From Bigelowiella natans CCMP2755 (taxonomy: Eukaryota > Protista > Cercozoa): a stretch of 64,000 nucleotides of DNA. The stretch covers positions 25,109-89,108 of the forward strand of contig ADNK01000166.1 in NCBI GenBank assembly GCA_000320545.1, written 5' to 3'. Every line of letters starts with the position of its first letter. Within the stretch, counting starts at the first letter, position 1. Position numbers and translations under genes: made by a program. Under the pieces are notes generated by a model that was not told where the DNA came from, searched no databases, and saw nothing but the letters and a program-made list of their open reading frames with translations. This document shows, in pieces, positions 14,576-21,764 of the stretch.

Positions 14576-15042
14576 TTGAAATCGATTGACTCAATGTTGC
14601 TTTTTCATCATCGATTGTGTTTTGAGTTCCTAAACAGAATCATTCATTGTGCTGTTGCTGCGCTTCTGCTGTTCCTGTGCTTCTGCTTGACAACAATGCA
14701 ATTCCATAGTCTCATCGGTTGTTTCCGTTGCCATGCTCGGACAATTCCTTTCATTTTCACACATTCACTTCACCCCCATCTCAATCCATCACACAAGCGC
14801 GAACGCGCATCCTGAAAATTCTGTAGCCTTCATGGCTGCATAGCGTACGCACGTGCGAACACATGCAGTTCAGTGCACATGTTCTTTGCAACATGTGCTC
14901 CATTTGCAGCATTTTTTCACCTGCACATGTCCCAAAGTGAACATTGAATGGGATCAAAATTCATTTGGCACATGGACACAATGTCCATGTGCGTGTGCGC
15001 GTGAGGAACACACGTGCCCAGGCACACCACATGCACCCAAAA

Positions 15043-15434
15043 TGTCAGAAGTGCAAGGCGACGCGCTGCAGAATGCAGGCCAGCAGCACAGTCAGATGAA
15101 GGAAGGAAGGGTGGGAGGACAGCTGCACAAGCGGCTGCCTCGATTCTCTGTTGAGTTCTGACCTTTTCACATGCATGCACCAAGTCAACTGTCATCAGGC
15201 GAAATCACCTGAACCACGTGCATGACATCGTGCTGCAGAAGGAAGGAAGACGCGCCCACTTCCTTTGCTGGCACATGGCTGATGCAGCACTGTCCTGCCC
15301 TTGTCGCAGGCACAGAACCTGCCTGCATCAACAGCCCATTCTGCACTGCTTGTCGCAGCCTGCAAGTGCCCGCCAGCGTTGCTGCTGCTGCCACAAGCAT
15401 GCACTTCGCGCATTGAGTGCAAAGCACTCCAACA
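15043..15434 (-). repeat. 3' LTR (left copy)
   Basis: TGTCAGAAG...CTCCAACA on the + strand; identical to 18262-18653 except at 3 positions in its first 20 bp. Confidence 0.95.
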
Positions 15435-15453
15435 CGCTGCCCTTTCCTTCAAT
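15435..15453 (-). other. Polypurine tract of the LTR element
   Basis: Minus strand reads TTGAAGGAAAGGGCAGCG immediately before the 3' LTR. Confidence 0.7.
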
Positions 15454-18231
15454 TTGCTGTGCAGCAAATTGCGAAGTGCAACACACGGGCGATGTGTTGT
15501 CACCGCATGCTCCAGGACAGAAAAGATGACCATGCGCATCATCAAAAACTGTCCTGGCCAGCATGCCAGAGCCAGAGCAGACAAAAACAACGGCTGGCAC
15601 GCGTGCATGCGTGCATGCATGCATGCAGCCATCGTGAAAAACTGATCTGCTCAGTCTCACGAGCTGCCAGGATCATTGATCCTGCAGTGGCACCGCTGGG
15701 ACAACGTCCCACGACCACGCTGCCCTTTTCCTCTCTTCTGTTGATCAGCAAGAGAGGGGGGAAAAAGGCGATGCCCATTGGGGTGCATCGTTTCGGAAAA
15801 AATGTGAAAAGAAAAGGAAAGCACCACTTCGGTGTTCCTTCAAATGCCCGCACCAGAGTGAGAAAAGCAACAAGTGCTCAAACACTTGTTCGCTGACTCA
15901 CAAATCCAAAGCCCGTGACAAGCACCCACGGCTGGGGTGCAAGGTGCACGGAGGGAGAGGGGGGGGGAGGGGAATGGAGACACTTGCATGGAGAGGCCAT
16001 GCACCTGTGGGTGATGCAAACACCTGCAGCGTGTGTCAAAATGAAGTCACAGAAGCTGAAGGCAGAGAAGCTGCCTTGGCTTCAATTTCCTTTCCGGGGC
16101 CGTGTTGATCACGGCCCCATTGCAGGTGCAGACAAGACATCAAGATTTCGTTGAGGCCGTTCTTCGGAGCATCACTGACGGAGGTGCATGCTCTTCTCAC
16201 AATTGAGCTCAAGAGTCATGTGTTCGTGTGTGTGCTTTCAACTGAACGCTTCGTTTGCAATTTTTGTGTTCATGGCAATCACTCAGAAGTCACACGGGAT
16301 CCACAATTCAGAAACACAGTCAGTCAATGAAGTGGAGGCAGAATGGACGTCTCCATTCTGTTGCCCACCCATTTCCTGACTGTCATCTTTTTGCATTGTC
16401 GTCCCACATGGTTGACCGTGCTCACAGACTGGTCGTGGAGGATGGCTGTGACACTTCATCACGTGTGACTGTGCCGAAATTCTGTTTTGTCACAATCGCA
16501 TGACGTTGATTGTGTTGACATCGTTCAATCTCGAGTCGCAATGTTCGTTGGTCGGTGATGTTGCTACGAGCATCGTCCTTCGATCATTCGATGGCATTGC
16601 CTGCGGTGTTCGTTTGTTCAATGGCGCTGAACAATTGGTTTTTTTTTGTTTTCAGGATCCTTTTCATCTGCGCAAGCGATTGTTCTTCAGAGCTTGCGTG
16701 GTTCGTTTCCGACACCAGCCGGCACAGACCACAATTGTCGATTTCGGTGTCAATGTTGACCCTCACCGATTGACCTCTGACAGGTCGGAATTGACAGGAG
16801 GACTGTGAACATTGACATCGAACAACGGGGATGTCTCCAAGGCAATTGCTTTGATTTCATTCGATGCAACATTCTTCTTCCGCAAGAAGGCGCTTGCGTC
16901 GAACCCCCATTCCTTGGGTCAAGTCGTGAGTTCACCGTCGTTCAACATCCTCGTGTGGGTCACCCAGGACTTGCGAGCGGCAAAGAACGCTGCAACCCTG
17001 CAGGTGCACCGGATGTGTGATGATGCATGGAGATTTCGACACCGGAGGTGTTGTCAGCACCTCCGTGATTTCATTGCCCATTTTCGCATCGTGTGTTTGC
17101 GGTCGCATGCCCGCACATCACAATCATGATTGCGGCACTGTCCGGAAAAAAAAAAAATGCAAGCATGCGTTGTGAATCGGTGCATGATTCTTGATTGTGA
17201 CCCCGTGATGCAAATCGCGCTCATCACAGTGTCGGCATGAGGCTGTCAATGATTGCTTTGTTCATCAGGTAGCCGCGATTTGCCACTCACGTTCCGGGCA
17301 TTGCAGGCCGCAGCGAACGCAGGTTGGCATGCTTTTCCTTGGAATCAATTTCATTTTCGATTTGTTCACATCATCATGAAAAATTTGTGCACTTGAATTT
17401 GGCATGGTGCAAGCAAGTGCGAGAGATTCACAAATCGTTTCACTGTCACACGGTGTGCGTTTCTTGGATTCACTCATGAGTGCACATCCTTGAATCGCAT
17501 TTCTGCATGCTGGACTGTCACTTTGTCGCACGTGTCACTCATTCATTCCCTGCAATTGTCACAGCATGGGAGAGCATGGTGGTTCAGCCACTTGTCGTGA
17601 TCCACCATTCTCCGATGTGGACAACACTCTGATGCCACGGTCGTGTTCTCAAGGTTCGCAAATCTTTCCTTGATCTGTCAAGATCCAGATGAGACCATTG
17701 TTTTTTTTCATCAGATCGTTGTGGCATTTGTCTCAGGGAAGAACAGTGTCCCGCTGTTTCGTTTCATGGCACATGCCTGGGATGGGAATCTTGCCAGGGA
17801 ACAAGGGGCAATTTGATCATGACAACAACTTTTTGGTTGCAAGTGGTCATGATTTCATTTTCGAGTTTCAATTTGATCATGACAACTTTGTGGTTGTGAT
17901 TCCATTTTCGTGTTTGATGGGGAACACTTTGATTTCGCTTTTTTTTTCTTGTTTGCTGTTTGTTCCTTGTTGCAGTTGGTCGATTTGACTTTTTTTTTGA
18001 GTTTTGCCCCTCTGTTGAGTCACTTTGCTTGGTTGCAAATTTTTGTTTTTGAGTCATGGGTGATCACATTTCGTTTTGTTCCAACACAGATTCATTCTTT
18101 CCAGACTGGTTGGATTTTCGGTGCACCAGCACCTAGCAATCCGACCATCACCGACCAAGTTCGTGTCGTGGCACCTTCAAACCAGTTCTGCCAGACTGAA
18201 CTGTTTGAGCCAAGTTTTTTTGGGCGCAACT

Positions 18232-18261
18232 GGGCGGCGGAAGCCGCGTGGGCTCACAACC
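18232..18261 (-). other. Primer-binding site complementary to the 5' half (anticodon arm) of initiator tRNA-Met
   Basis: Minus strand reads GGTTGTGAGCCC directly after the LTR (Drosophila copia PBS is GGTTATGGGCCCAG). The + strand GCGGAAGCCGCGTGGGCTCACAACC resembles tRNAi-Met GCGGAAGCGTGCTGGGCCCATAACC. Confidence 0.85.
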
Positions 18262-18653
18262 TGTTGGAAGTGCAAGGCGGCGCGCTGCAGAATGCAGGCC
18301 AGCAGCACAGTCAGATGAAGGAAGGAAGGGTGGGAGGACAGCTGCACAAGCGGCTGCCTCGATTCTCTGTTGAGTTCTGACCTTTTCACATGCATGCACC
18401 AAGTCAACTGTCATCAGGCGAAATCACCTGAACCACGTGCATGACATCGTGCTGCAGAAGGAAGGAAGACGCGCCCACTTCCTTTGCTGGCACATGGCTG
18501 ATGCAGCACTGTCCTGCCCTTGTCGCAGGCACAGAACCTGCCTGCATCAACAGCCCATTCTGCACTGCTTGTCGCAGCCTGCAAGTGCCCGCCAGCGTTG
18601 CTGCTGCTGCCACAAGCATGCACTTCGCGCATTGAGTGCAAAGCACTCCAACA
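18262..18653 (-). repeat. 5' LTR (right copy)
   Basis: TGTTGGA...TCCAACA, a 7-bp terminal inverted repeat. Confidence 0.95.
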
Positions 18654-18769
18654 CAAAAAGCACACGTGCTCCATTCACATCCAGAGAGAGCCCTGATGGT
18701 GAGTGCAAGCACTTGTGTGATGGACATGGCAACAGCACGCACAACACGTGCATGACATCACGTGTCCAT

Positions 18770-20817
18770 CGTCTCAGTGCCCTCAGCAAGCTGGTGTCTG
18801 GAGCTGCAACGACGAGAGTCCATGAACACCTGGAAAACGACAACTGTCTTGCGGATGAACAAGGTGATTTTGGAAGGAATCGTGGCACTGACTTCCACAT
18901 CTTCAACCTGTGCCAAGTGTTGCATCTCCGCAAGGCCCAAAACCAAGGATCCACAGTTGCTTTCGTTGACCCACGCAAAGCCTGTGATGAAGTTTGGATC
19001 CAAGGTCCACGAGCTGAGCTGCTCAGGAGTGGTGTGACGGGCAGAGTGTGCAACCTCTTCAAGAACATGCTGGCCTCCCAATCCCGCAGGGTTGGGTCCC
19101 CGATTGATCAAGCTCTGAGCCAACCCTTCCACGTCAACCAAGGTCTCCCTCAAGGTGCCCCGGAATCACCAGTTCCACTTGCTCTGTTTGTTGACGACCT
19201 CACAGAACGGCTGAGACAGCGTGGTTGTGGCGTCCAGTTTGCCAACACTCGTGGACCAGGTCTCTTCTTTGCAGATGACAGCGCTCTGGTTGCTGCCACT
19301 CCTCTGGACATCAAGCTGGCTCTTGAAGTGACGACTCAATGGTGCAGAAAATGGAGACTCAAGGCAAACGGAGATGAGTCTGGCATCACGATTGTCGGGT
19401 CTTCTGTTCTCAAACAGGAGTGTTCACGATGTGAGTTCAGGTGTTGTGGGGAATTGATGCGCGCAGTGAACCAATGTCGACACTTGGGAATTGCCTTCCA
19501 AAGCTCCTTGTCGTTCCACACACACATCGTGGACACTGTGAAAGCAGCGAAGCGAGCTTCCGGCAGGCTCAAGTGCAGCTTTGCTGGACACTCAGGCCTC
19601 CGACCCAGAACACGGATCCACCTTTGGAATGCTCTCGTGCGCCCCACTCTTGAACGTGGCATGGGTCCAATTTGTCCCATTCTGCCCCAAGCTGTCTCAA
19701 AAACCGGCTGCAGAGTGTCCAGACTCAGTTCCTCAAAGAGACTCTTCGTGCCCTGCACACAGCCCATGGCCAACCACTGTGCTTCCTGTTGTCTGAACGT
19801 GGCCAGGAAGGTTTGCAGGCCCGCTGGGACAAGTCTCTCGTGAGCCTCCTGAGCAGGATGCGTCAGCAACCTGATGAATCCATGACAAAGGATCTTCCAC
19901 TCCTGTCCCTGGATCAGGCTGATGCTCTGTGCTCAAGTTGGGGTCACAACGTTGGGTCTGTTCTTCACCGTGTCACTGGCTGTGACCAATCTGCCTGTGG
20001 CTTGGACCTGTTGGTCAACTTGGACCAGTCCCATCCAAAACTGGTTGATGTTGACCTCAATCGCAGAGTCAGGGCTCACCTGTCCACCAATGGCAACTTG
20101 TGTCGCAGCTTTTGCTCGTTCGTCAAACCCGACATCCCAACTTGCAAATCCAGAGCCTGGGCGAGGAGCCACATTGGAAGGCCAGCTTCCAGATTGTTTG
20201 AGTGTCATCTTGATGATTGACAGCATGACAATTCAGGTGTGTTGCTCAAACTTCAGCTCCGCGCTGGGACTTGCGAAACTGAGGAGCACAGGGCCAAAGT
20301 TTGCAACTTGCCCCCCTCTTTCTCGGTGTGTCCTCTTTGCAATGCTGAAGTTGTTCAAAGTGTCAACCACCTCATCCATCATTGCACTCACTTGAATGCA
20401 GAGAGATGCAAGCTTCTCTCGCACATGAGATCAGCTCTGGGTTCAGCTTCTTCCCGCCACTCTTCATTCTTTGACGCTCCAGACTCCTCCAAAACCAAAA
20501 CTCTGCTGGGGGCCCCCTCAGATGATCCAATCGCAGATCGTCATGTGGACATGGCCTTCAGGAAGTTTTTGCTCAGAGTGGAGGTCTTGCGCCGTCAGAA
20601 TTTTGCTGCTGATGTCATTGCTTCTCAATGACCAAGTCATGCTGATTTTGGCAAACCAGCCAGTTGATTTGCCAGTCACAGTCCTCACTGAAACCAGTTC
20701 GAGGCACTGCACTTTGCACGCTGCAAGTGTCTTGCAACACTTTGGAAGTGTGGTTTTTCATCATTGTTTCATTGTTTCATTGTTTGTCATCATTGTTTCA
20801 TTGTTTCATCATTGTCT
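18770..20817 (+). mobile_element. 5'-truncated, degenerate non-LTR retrotransposon (LINE): RT domain, C-terminal CCHC finger, simple-repeat tail
   Basis: RT motifs DEQGDF, FVDPRKACD, GLPQGAPESP, LFFADD, CRHLG, LVRPTLE. Frame breaks near 19680 and 20220. CPLC...HLIHHC finger. Stop at 20631. (CATTGTTT)n tail at 20755-20817. Confidence 0.9.
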
Positions 20818-21164
20818 TCTCTCTTTCTTTCTCTTTTTCGTCTTCTCCCTTTCTGTCACCAGGCTTTTCCTTTTTTGAAACGCTTCGCATTGCTCGTTGT
20901 GACTGAAAAATGGCATCAATGTGCACGATTGCACAATTGATGTCACGTCGTTGTCTGCTGCGAAACACAACACACATCCACAATCATGCATGTTCGGCGC
21001 ACGCTAGCCAGTTGGCACGCACGTGCGATGCACGTTTGTCTTGCTAGCTTGCAAGCATGTTGCATTTGACCTCTGCATGTGCAGCACTTCTGCCATCAAT
21101 CGCTCCGTCGCAGCAATGAAGCGTGAAGTAAATGCATGCGCATGCACGTGCCGAACGTGTCTAG

Positions 21165-21202
<38 letters not shown>

Positions 21203-21764
21203 TGTTGTTGTGTGTGGCGTTGTTGTGTGTGATGTTGTTGTGTGTGTGTGTGTGTGTGCACCGCACAGCAGCTAGCAGAGCGCTACAGTTGTGCTGCGTG
21301 CGTGCACCTGCGTTCATTTCGTTTGCTAGTTTGCGTGCGCGGCATGCTAGCTAGCAGCATGCGGAACGACATGTTGCAAATGATCATCAAATCAGCCGAT
21401 GCACGGCATTGTCCCTGCTCGCTATCATTGCGGGGCGAATGTGATGAAGTGATCAAATCTTTTCTGCAAACATGCACACGTGCAGCCGTGGAATGCTAAT
21501 TGCTAAATGACACAAACGCACTTGCTGTGCCGCAAATTGCACACAAGTGTGTGTGTGCATTCATCTGAACTATAGAACATACTTTCTGCTCTTTTTTTTA
21601 CCATTTGGTTTTATTATTTCGAAACCTTGTGCAGAACTACACAGCACATTTATTTCTTAATGATACGTATGTATCGAAATGAATGGAAGAGTTCGTGGGA
21701 CAAATTTTGGGTGGCTTCTACTGCACTGATGAAAGGCGAATAATTAACAATTCATCTATTCCTC

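What the first reader, a model, noticed from the sequence alone, without database searches (positions are those of the whole stretch)
18770..20631. Conserved LINE RT residues are destroyed specifically at TA-containing codons
Seen, against the known LINE RT consensus: DLxKAYD reads DPRKACD (CCA at 18971, TGT at 18983), YxYLG reads CRHLG (TGT 19475, CAC 19481), LEYG reads LERG (CGT 19655, a double TA->CG change) and SPxL reads SPVP. Each lesion reverts by restoring one TA. Motifs without TA codons (PQG, FADD, CCHC) are intact. Inference: TA existed and was mutated away, which inactivates the element by Tyr/Leu loss while leaving long open frames, so the copy looks deceptively intact.
Basis: partly seen in the sequence, partly recalled or inferred. 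Interest (0 to 1): 0.8.

Follow-up and report, generated by a model that had tools for sequence, protein, structure and literature searches.

The report
TpA-erased dead LINE copy, Bigelowiella
A truncated LINE copy in the alga Bigelowiella natans has had every TA changed to TG or CA, which turned all its tyrosines into Cys, His or Arg; this is the footprint of a TpA-specific hypermutation already reported in a 2026 preprint, so it is real and striking but not new.

Summary
Window 18772-20784 is a 5'-truncated LINE (RVT_1, E=1.3e-13) with no TA, inside a 6.2-kb block (14847-21004) holding only 3 TA.

Sister copies carry the complementary products at each (TGT/CAT, CCA/CTG; one copy keeps CTA). 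TA-normal relatives in marine metagenomes read DLRKAYD, SPVL, YRYLG and LEYG, with CTA/TAC/TAT codons. Of 18 Tyr codons in those relatives, the window has 10 Cys, 6 His, 1 Arg, 1 Leu.

The cause is the TpA>TpG/CpA hypermutation of Bigelowiella natans (bioRxiv 10.64898/2026.01.13.699255). This scan has already met it on other DNA of this genome.

- This copy was dead anyway: it is truncated, and private insertions cause a frameshift and a TGA.
- Most TA loss seems to predate the insertion. Close copies share about 90% of their TG/CA choices.
- Shared choices are biased to the synonymous outcome (50 vs 12, p=1e-6).
- Tyr codons stayed TA longer (p=0.005) and then decayed independently in each copy.

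So TA-eroded sources probably kept replicating. Surviving TAs sit mostly in GCTA/TAGC.

The parts
18772..20784 (+). 5'-truncated LINE (non-LTR retrotransposon) copy with zero TA dinucleotides
   Evidence: blastn to 29 other genomic copies: homology starts at 18772/3 and ends near 20784; TA positions
18770..19690 (+). Reverse-transcriptase reading frame up to the private frameshift
   Evidence: Pfam RVT_1 E=1.3e-13; phmmer to R2 and L1 ORF2p structures; relatives P0001-P0007
18971..18973 (+). CCA (Pro) at the Leu of D-L-x-K-A-Y-D
   Evidence: Copies: CCA x3, CTA (L003), CTG (L007); outgroup L031 has CTA
18983..18985 (+). TGT (Cys) at the Tyr of K-A-Y-D
   Evidence: Copies TGT/TGC and CAT/CAC; outgroup TAC; R2 has Phe here
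19175..19177 (+). CCA (Pro) at the Leu of S-P-x-L
   Evidence: Copies CCA, CTG, CCG, ACA; outgroup CTA; R2 has SPLL. Copies alone are ambiguous with an ancestral CCG
19475..19483 (+). TGT-CGA-CAC (C-R-H) at Y-R-Y of the YxYLG motif
   Evidence: Copies split TGT/CAT and CAC/TGC even within the 93-95% subfamily; outgroup L032 has TAT and TAT; P0004, P0002 and P0007 read YRYLG or YKYLG
19655..19657 (+). CGT (Arg) at the Tyr of L-E-Y-G
   Evidence: Copies: CGT x3 (WIN, L002, L009), TGT x5, CAT x3; outgroup TAT; P0004 and P0007 read LEYG/LEYA
19691..19692 (+). 2-bp insertion private to this copy; shifts the reading frame
   Evidence: Absent from all 10 other copies covering the site
20218..20222 (+). 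In-frame TGA (20218-20220) created by a private 3-bp insertion (20220-20222)
   Evidence: Insertion absent from all 26 other copies; ORF list
20329..20385 (+). Intact C-terminal CCHC-type zinc knuckle (Cys/His codons hold no TA)
   Evidence: Translation of 20239-20631; weak zf-RVT hit in the outgroup's homologous piece (E=0.03)
20632..20784 (+). 3' untranslated tail ending in short tandem repeats; common 3' end of all copies
   Evidence: tail pieces 20683-20787 recur in tandem in several loci
14847..21004 (.). Whole TA-free block (3 TA, all in GCTA/TAGC context): repeat fragments, an LTR-like element and the LINE
20785..21570 (.). Flank beyond the LINE's 3' end, single-copy in the genome apart from a (GT)n run, yet TA-depleted
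   Evidence: No TA up to 21004, then 10 of the 12 TAs up to 21504 are in GCTA/TAGC; only a self-match in the genome

Best explanation
Window 18772-20784 is a dead, 5'-truncated copy of a LINE family of Bigelowiella natans. It carries the end-state footprint of this alga's TpA-specific hypermutation. In that process the A of a TpA, on either DNA strand, becomes G (TpA>TpG or CpA), most plausibly by adenine deamination of targeted foreign or repeated DNA.

Every Tyr codon holds TA, so all tyrosines became Cys or His, and one became Arg after a further transition. xTA codons became Pro, Ser, Ala or Thr, or stayed synonymous. Codons without TA, and hence PQG, FADD and CCHC, were untouched. No in-frame stop can arise this way.

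Inferred timing: the replicating source lineage was already being eroded. It kept mostly synonymous outcomes and held on to its essential Tyr codons. After each copy was inserted, its remaining TAs, including the motif tyrosines, were converted at random to TG or CA.
For: Shown:
- All 29 other genomic copies examined (77-98% identical) are also TA-free.
- 101 alignment sites show TG in some copies and CA in others with no CG. 16 of them still have TA in some copy.
- TA-normal relatives L031/L032 (TA o/e 0.9, 78-79% identical) have TA at 142 aligned sites. There the genomic copies read CA 1095, TG 961, CG 55, TA 43.
- All six motif codons are CTA/TAC/TAT in the outgroup.
- The genome is B. natans or very close: JGI Bigna1 gene models are among the hits, at up to 92% identity.
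- The preprint 10.64898/2026.01.13.699255 observed TpA>TpG/CpA mutations arising in mutation-accumulation lines. It also found TpA-depleted CDS enriched for RT domains.

Timing:
- TG/CA discordance between copies rises from 3-8% at 1-2% background divergence to 50-60% for the most distant lineage.
- Sites fixed within the window's subfamily are 50 synonymous vs 12 nonsynonymous (p=1.2e-6). xTA and T|A codon classes prefer opposite products (23:5 vs 8:30, p=1e-6).
- Tyr codons are mixed/fixed 10/5 versus 22/62 for other coding sites (p=0.005). A second subfamily repeats this (47 vs 12; p=0.033).
- WIN and L002 have different 5' ends and flanks, yet share 68 of 76 synonymous-capable outcomes and 11 of 15 Tyr outcomes.
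Against: - No de novo mutation was observed at this locus. Only 3 TAs are left to mutate.
- The enzyme is unknown.
- Part of the synonymous excess could be ordinary synonymous divergence from the outgroup rather than filtered hypermutation. The outgroup-free test, though, gives the same direction (38 vs 14, p=0.0012).
- The two subfamilies share some history, so the replication is not fully independent.
- The RT region is covered by only 4-10 copies.
- No intact full-length copy was found, and no TA-normal copy in this genome. Continued activity of eroded sources is therefore inferred, and mobilisation in trans cannot be excluded.
- CGT at 19655 and CCG states at 19175 could also fit an ancestral CpG.
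Confidence: 0.85

Rival explanations
1. Pure post-insertion inactivation. A TA-normal active element inserted here, and a RIP-like defence then erased all its TAs in place. That erasure is what killed this copy.
For: Motif Tyr codons differ between close copies (TGT vs CAT, CAC vs TGC), so they were hit after the copies separated. The single-copy flank 20785-21570 is also TA-depleted, which shows action in place on DNA. Median TA density rises from 1 to 5 per 100 bp with distance upstream of the 29 copies.
Against: Close copies with different truncation points share about 90% of their TG/CA choices where 50% is expected. The shared choices are synonymous-biased. The copy is 5'-truncated and carries private frame-breaking insertions, so hypermutation was not needed to kill it. 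No TA-normal copy exists in the assembly.
Confidence: 0.08
2. Editing happens during retrotransposition rather than on resident DNA. An ADAR-like enzyme edits the LINE RNA (UA>UG), and a deaminase edits the minus-strand cDNA (giving TA>CA). Each new copy arrives already mutated.
For: The 5'-U preference fits ADAR (preprint discussion). Serial bursts at each round of copying would also give nested shared states and would let selection choose which copies become sources.
Against: The two products are nearly equal (CA 1095, TG 961), which would require equal editing of RNA and cDNA. Non-LINE neighbours, an LTR-like element and a single-copy flank are erased too. The preprint saw the mutations arise in a transcriptionally silent, single-copy integrated virus with no copying step.
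Confidence: 0.05
3. Adaptive recoding. The family evolved TA avoidance, for example to escape a TA-directed nuclease or TA-targeting transposons. On this view Cys/His/Pro are its natural functional residues.
For: Synonymous bias at fixed sites shows that selection shaped the outcome. All copies are TA-free.
Against: At one and the same conserved position, copies carry Cys, His or Arg at random. Non-coding tails and flanks are erased as well. Relatives carry Tyr/Leu.
Confidence: 0.01
4. The TG/CA dimorphisms come from decay of methylated CpG (CG>TG/CA), not from TA.
For: CpG o/e is about 0.5 in the LINE. 81 sites are CG/TG or CG/CA polymorphic. 11 sites, including 19176 and 19655, show TG, CA and 15% or more CG. 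37% of outgroup CG sites are lost in the copies.
Against: 101 TG/CA sites have no CG in any copy, and 16 retain TA. The outgroup has TA, not CG, at these sites. CpG decay cannot remove TA. It is a real but separate, slower process.
Confidence: 0.01

Closest known systems
TpA hypermutation of integrated foreign DNA in Bigelowiella natans (Mettrop et al., bioRxiv 10.64898/2026.01.13.699255, 2026)
   Same: Same species (Bigna1 matches). Same signature: TpA>TpG and CpA only, both strands, with TpA depletion and CpA+TpG enrichment. The preprint lists RT and endonuclease-RT domains among TpA-depleted CDS and 124 TpA-depleted clusters.
   Different: The preprint studies an integrated giant virus and a virophage that are still TA-rich and mutating now. 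This LINE is the fully erased end state. A term search and the Results and Discussion show no comparison of retrotransposon copies, no codon consequences, no timing relative to transposition and no flanking-context rule.
Repeat-induced point mutation (RIP) of fungi
   Same: A host process that hypermutates repeated or foreign DNA in one dinucleotide context on both strands and ruins transposon genes (from established knowledge and the RIP papers listed).
   Different: The direction is opposite. RIP makes TpA from CpA (C:G>T:A), raises AT content and creates stop codons. Here TpA is destroyed (A:T>G:C), GC rises and no in-frame stop can be created. Duplication dependence and a link to meiosis were not tested here.
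APOBEC3 / ADAR editing of retroelements in animals
   Same: Deaminase-type hypermutation of retroelements with a fixed neighbour preference. ADAR prefers a 5' U, which matches TpA (preprint discussion).
   Different: Those enzymes act on cDNA or dsRNA and leave strand-asymmetric clusters. Here both strands are hit about equally, and resident DNA plus a single-copy flank are affected.
Non-LTR (LINE) retrotransposons with a C-terminal CCHC and a tandem-repeat tail
   Same: RVT_1 domain, FADD, YxYLG and LEYG motifs in relatives, a CCHC knuckle, and 3'-anchored copies with varied 5' truncation.
   Different: The clade is unassigned. No AP-type or restriction-like endonuclease domain was detected upstream in the longer copies.

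Membership tests
LINE / non-LTR retrotransposon | Reverse-transcriptase domain of the RVT_1 type with the catalytic xADD motif | tested here: met
   RVT_1 E=1.3e-13; E=4.7e-20 in copy L007; FFADD present
LINE / non-LTR retrotransposon | Many dispersed copies that share the 3' end and are truncated at varied 5' points | tested here: met
   47 matches, nearly all ending at query position about 1881 and starting anywhere from 13 to 1663; boundaries
LINE / non-LTR retrotransposon | Endonuclease domain (AP-type upstream of the RT, or restriction-like downstream) | tested here: inconclusive
   No Pfam endonuclease hit in 435 aa upstream of the RT in L007, or in L009, even at E up to 5. Those copies are themselves hypermutated.
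B. natans TpA hypermutation footprint | [quoted passage not shown] | tested here: met
   TA o/e 0.00-0.02, TG 1.4-1.9 and CA 1.5-2.2 over 15001-21000, against about 0.75, 1.2 and 1.2 elsewhere
B. natans TpA hypermutation footprint | Changes are A:T>G:C transitions confined to TpA, giving TpG or CpA | tested here: met
   At the relatives' TA sites the window has TG 63, CA 68, CG 6, other 12, TA 0. 127 transitions fall on the 262 bases inside TA, against 100 on 821 other A/T bases.
B. natans TpA hypermutation footprint | The genome is Bigelowiella natans | tested here: met
   Paralogous proteins named jgi/Bigna1 at up to 92% identity. Genome size of 91.4 Mb fits the 85-Mb callable genome, said to be 90% of the total, in the preprint.
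B. natans TpA hypermutation footprint | Mutations arise de novo at the locus in cultured lines | not tested
The preprint's hypermutable regions are elsewhere.
Fungal RIP | C:G>T:A transitions, mostly CpA>TpA, that raise TpA and create stop codons | tested here: not met
   The direction is the reverse. The only stop codon inside the former reading frame comes from an insertion.
ADAR-type RNA editing fixed by retrotransposition | A>G on the transcribed strand only, in clusters | tested here: not met
   TG and CA products are nearly equal (961 vs 1095). A non-transposed flank is affected too.

The most novel reading that the evidence does not exclude
The LINE family and the TpA mutator are in a running contest. 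The replicating lineage survives by shedding dispensable TAs through the synonymous product (xTA>xTG, NNT|A>NNC|A), and so becomes a poorer target. Tyrosine, whose codons cannot lose TA silently, is the element's unavoidable weak point and is lost only in dead copies. The mutator also spares TA inside GCTA/TAGC, above all GCTAGC, and spreads several hundred bases into single-copy flanks. Both points suggest a duplex-DNA, region-targeted enzyme with a recognition rule wider than the dinucleotide.
Probability: 0.5. Interest if true: 0.6.

Novelty: new member of a known kind. Interest (0 to 1): 0.45.

Why it matters
It gives a clean, codon-level natural experiment on a newly reported eukaryotic genome-defence-like mutator. 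The mutator kills genes by missense only (Tyr>Cys/His, Leu>Pro) and never by stops. Hypermutated transposons and viral genes will therefore pass ORF-based annotation as 'intact' genes, as the Bigna1 gene models among the hits show.

The comparison of copies adds three things not found in the preprint sections read here, or by a term search of its text:
- Erosion began while the LINE lineage was still replicating.
- It was filtered by selection.
- It obeys a wider context rule.

These are testable with the existing mutation-accumulation lines. The basic phenomenon is already published as a preprint and has been met repeatedly in this scan.

Tried and rejected
- Ancestral CpG as the source of the TG/CA dimorphism. 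Rejected for 101 clean sites and by the outgroup. It stays open from the copies alone for 19176 and 19655.
- A TA-normal master in this genome. None found; the best match to L032 is 88% identical and TA-free. Only the best 40 of 624 candidates were scored.
- An intact full-length copy. L007, L009 and L012 extend 5' but are all frame-broken.
- Clade assignment through an endonuclease domain. No hit.
- Solved structures. They align only the N-terminal two thirds of the RT, so the YLG and LEYG positions had to be judged from metagenomic relatives.
- The 3' flank gradient across loci. Uninformative, because tails recur in tandem and copies nest in other TA-free repeats.
- L009's apparent reverse synonymous bias. 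This is an artefact of choosing sites by dimorphism, and it was dropped.
- Not used: read laying, the look-up of sequencing runs, structure prediction and the large representative search. The question did not need them.

Full report
**What is there**

The stretch 18770-20631 lies in a LINE copy whose homology to other genomic copies runs from 18772 to about 20784. Its first frame (18770-19690) hits Pfam RVT_1 (E=1.3e-13) and aligns to solved R2 and L1 ORF2p reverse transcriptases.

The copy starts inside the RT region, so it is 5'-truncated. Several private indels are absent from all other copies:
- a 2-bp insertion at 19691-2, which shifts the frame;
- a 12-bp insertion at 19746-57;
- a 3-bp insertion at 20220-2, which creates the TGA at 20218-20220;
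- a 1-bp insertion at 20644.

The 468-aa ORF listed from 18437 begins in non-LINE sequence, the second copy of an LTR-like direct repeat (15033-15332 / 18252-18551, 98% identical).

The LINE sits in a 6158-bp block (14847-21004) with only three TA dinucleotides. The longest TA-free gap elsewhere in the window is 186 bp.

**Check of the observation**

| Position | Codon | Motif as read |
|---|---|---|
| 18971 | CCA | D-P-R-K |
| 18983 | TGT | KACD |
| 19175 | CCA | SPVP |
| 19475 | TGT | CRHLG (first residue) |
| 19481 | CAC | CRHLG (third residue) |
| 19655 | CGT | LERG |

PQG, FFADD and the CCHC knuckle (20329-20385) are intact.

**Were these once TA?**

Three independent lines say yes.

1. 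Sister copies. In an alignment of this copy with 29 others from the same genome (77-98% identical, all TA-free), each named codon shows the complementary products.

| Position | States among the copies |
|---|---|
| 18971 | CCA, CTG, and CTA still present in L003 |
| 18983 | TGT/TGC vs CAT/CAC |
| 19175 | CCA, CTG, CCG (ACA in one copy) |
| 19475 | TGT vs CAT (CAC in one copy) |
| 19481 | CAC/CAT vs TGC/TGT |
| 19655 | CGT, TGT, CAT |

Across the element, 101 sites have TG in some copies and CA in others with no CG anywhere. Sixteen of those still keep TA in some copy. A TG/CA difference needs two adjacent changes under ordinary mutation, but only one from TA.

2. Natural relatives. A protein search returned JGI Bigna1 gene models, which identify the genome as Bigelowiella natans or a very close strain. 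It also returned metagenomic proteins that read DLRKAYD and SPVL (P0001), YRYLG and LEYG (P0004), and the same motifs in the distant P0007.

3. The DNA of those relatives. Contigs L031 (a Tara Oceans scaffold) and L032 have normal TA content (o/e 0.9) and are 78-79% identical to the window.
- Where they have TA, the window has CA 68, TG 63, CG 6, other 12, and never TA.
- Over all copies the counts are CA 1095, TG 961, CG 55, TA 43.
- At the six motif codons the relatives have CTA, TAC, CTA, TAT, TAT, TAT.
- Codon by codon, 70 of 160 TA-touching codons changed residue against 79 of 422 others (p=3e-9).
- All 18 Tyr codons are gone: 10 Cys, 6 His, 1 Arg, 1 Leu. The remaining replacements are the predicted ones: I>V/T/M, V>A, L>P/S.

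Outside TA, A:T>G:C and G:C>A:T transitions are about equal, 12% and 10% of bases. So substitutions are not spread at random over contexts, and functional relatives do not carry Cys/His/Pro.

**Cause**

A 2026 preprint (10.64898/2026.01.13.699255) reports that B. natans mutation-accumulation lines mutate two integrated viral regions about 1000-fold faster than the rest of the genome. The changes are almost only TpA>TpG/CpA.
- It finds 324 TpA-depleted CDS enriched for RT, endonuclease-RT and DDE domains, and 124 TpA-depleted clusters.
- It proposes an adenine deaminase, with an ADAT2-like candidate.

The window's LINE is the saturated end state of that process. Other windows of this genome gave the same reading earlier in this scan.

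If every copy had been erased independently after insertion, two copies should agree on TG versus CA at about half the sites. Instead, discordance tracks background divergence:
- 3-8% for pairs that differ by 1-2% elsewhere;
- about 21% at 7-15% background divergence;
- 50-60% for the most distant lineage (L009).

WIN and L002 have different 5' ends and unrelated flanks. They still agree at 68 of 76 sites that have a synonymous option and at 11 of 15 Tyr sites. Most TA loss therefore predates these insertions.

The shared losses were filtered by selection. Among sites fixed within the window's subfamily, 50 took the synonymous product and 12 the nonsynonymous one (p=1.2e-6). The two codon classes prefer opposite products, which excludes a simple strand bias:
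- xTA codons: TG 23, CA 5;
- NNT|A boundaries: TG 8, CA 30 (Fisher p=1e-6).

Without any outgroup the same test gives 38 vs 14 (p=0.0012).

Tyr codons have no silent way out. They are more often still variable within the subfamily: 10 mixed and 5 fixed, against 22 and 62 for other coding sites (p=0.005). A second subfamily repeats both results (47 vs 12; p=0.033).

The three motif tyrosines (19475, 19481, 19655) are all in the 'mixed' class.

The simplest reading is this. The replicating source lineage was under attack, shed dispensable TAs silently and kept essential tyrosines. The dead copies then lost the rest at random.

Caveats:
- Some synonymous excess could be ordinary divergence.
- The subfamilies share part of their history.
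- Few copies cover the RT.
- Eroded sources might have been mobilised in trans.

**LERG**

CGT needs a second transition outside the TpA context. CG occurs in 2.3% of copy-by-site cells at outgroup TA sites, so it is uncommon but not exceptional.

From the copies alone, an ancestral CpG (Arg) decaying to TGT/CAT cannot be excluded. The outgroup TAT and LEYG in P0004 and P0007 favour Tyr. WIN and L002 share CGT. This suggests their common source already lacked this Tyr.

**'Deceptively intact'**

The logic holds. TpA>TpG/CpA cannot create an in-frame stop: TAA>TGA stays a stop, while TAA>CAA and TAG>TGG/CAG open it. TA-free DNA has only TGA stops, so long meaningless ORFs appear on both strands, for example 177 aa at 19336-19869 on the minus strand. 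But this particular copy is not intact, and hypermutation is not what first disabled it.

**Surroundings**

- The left 200 bp of the block are fragments of dispersed repeats.
- The right flank 20785-21570 matches only itself in the genome, apart from a (GT)n run. Yet it has no TA up to 21004, and after that almost only TAs in GCTA/TAGC up to 21504. So the process seems to act on resident DNA and to spread past the repeat.
- Surviving isolated TAs in all loci are in GCTA/TAGC in 58 of 91 cases, against 14% in normal DNA (p=2e-27). GCTAGC is the commonest. This agrees with earlier notes of the scan.

The genome tool forbids consensus or repaired frames on viral or proviral stretches, and I could not tell whether a retroelement counts. 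Natural TA-normal relatives answered the question instead.

**Verdict**

The inference of TA loss is confirmed. The claim of inactivation by that loss is only partly supported. The mechanism is already described in a preprint. The added value is the codon-level proof, the timing and selection signal, and the context rule.

Noticed in passing
window 16565, 17270, 18134, 21005-21504; loci L002-L043: TAs that survive in erased DNA sit mostly in GCTA/TAGC, with GCTAGC commonest. 58 of 91 isolated TAs are in that context, against 14% of TAs in normal-density DNA (p=2e-27). The mutator seems to spare this context.
   Followed up: partly
window 20785-21570: DNA beyond the LINE's 3' end is single-copy in the genome apart from a (GT)n run, yet it is TA-free up to 21004 and then holds almost only GCTA/TAGC-type TAs. 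This looks like spreading of the hypermutation into a unique flank, or a very old single-copy insert.
   Followed up: partly
L031:50-682, L032:37-1488: Marine metagenome contigs (one from Tara Oceans) carry a TA-normal relative of this LINE (TA o/e 0.9, 78-79% identical to the window). No such copy was found in this genome. The source organism is unknown.
   Followed up: partly
L033:1-1106: Another metagenome contig encodes a 53%-identical RT and has only 2 TA in 1106 bp. The same erasure therefore seems to operate in an uncultured relative too.
   Followed up: no
window 18772-20784 and its copies: A second, slower decay: 37% of the relatives' CpG sites are TG or CA in the copies, 81 sites are CG/TG or CG/CA polymorphic, and CpG o/e is about 0.5 in the LINE against 0.8-1.0 around it. 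This is a possible sign of cytosine methylation on the repeats.
   Followed up: partly
window 18772-20784 vs L031/L032: Outside TpA, A>G is commonest when the A is followed by C (AC>GC 21%, GT>GC 22% of sites). Overall A:T>G:C equals G:C>A:T there, although the host's normal bias is 2.65 towards AT. This may be weak off-target activity, or change on the relative's own lineage.
   Followed up: no
29 loci, 5' junctions of the LINE copies: Median TA count per 100 bp rises from 1 next to the junction to 5 at about 1 kb upstream. Some loci are nested in other TA-free repeats, so this gradient is only suggestive.
   Followed up: partly
window 15033-15332 and 18252-18551: An LTR-like direct repeat pair, 98% identical and 3219 bp apart, lies just upstream of the LINE. 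It is TA-free like the rest. ORFs tested in and next to it (15417-15896, 17910-18380) have no Pfam hit.
   Followed up: no
window 15000-21000, both strands: Many long ORFs on both strands, up to 177 aa antisense to the RT, exist only because TA-free DNA lacks TAA and TAG. JGI gene models (Bigna1 81389, 141726, 72328) are called on sister copies.
   Followed up: partly
window 20683-20787 and loci L002, L011, L013, L019: The LINE's 3' tail, with its short tandem repeats, recurs several times in tandem downstream of some copies. This suggests repeated insertion into, or slippage of, the tail.
   Followed up: no
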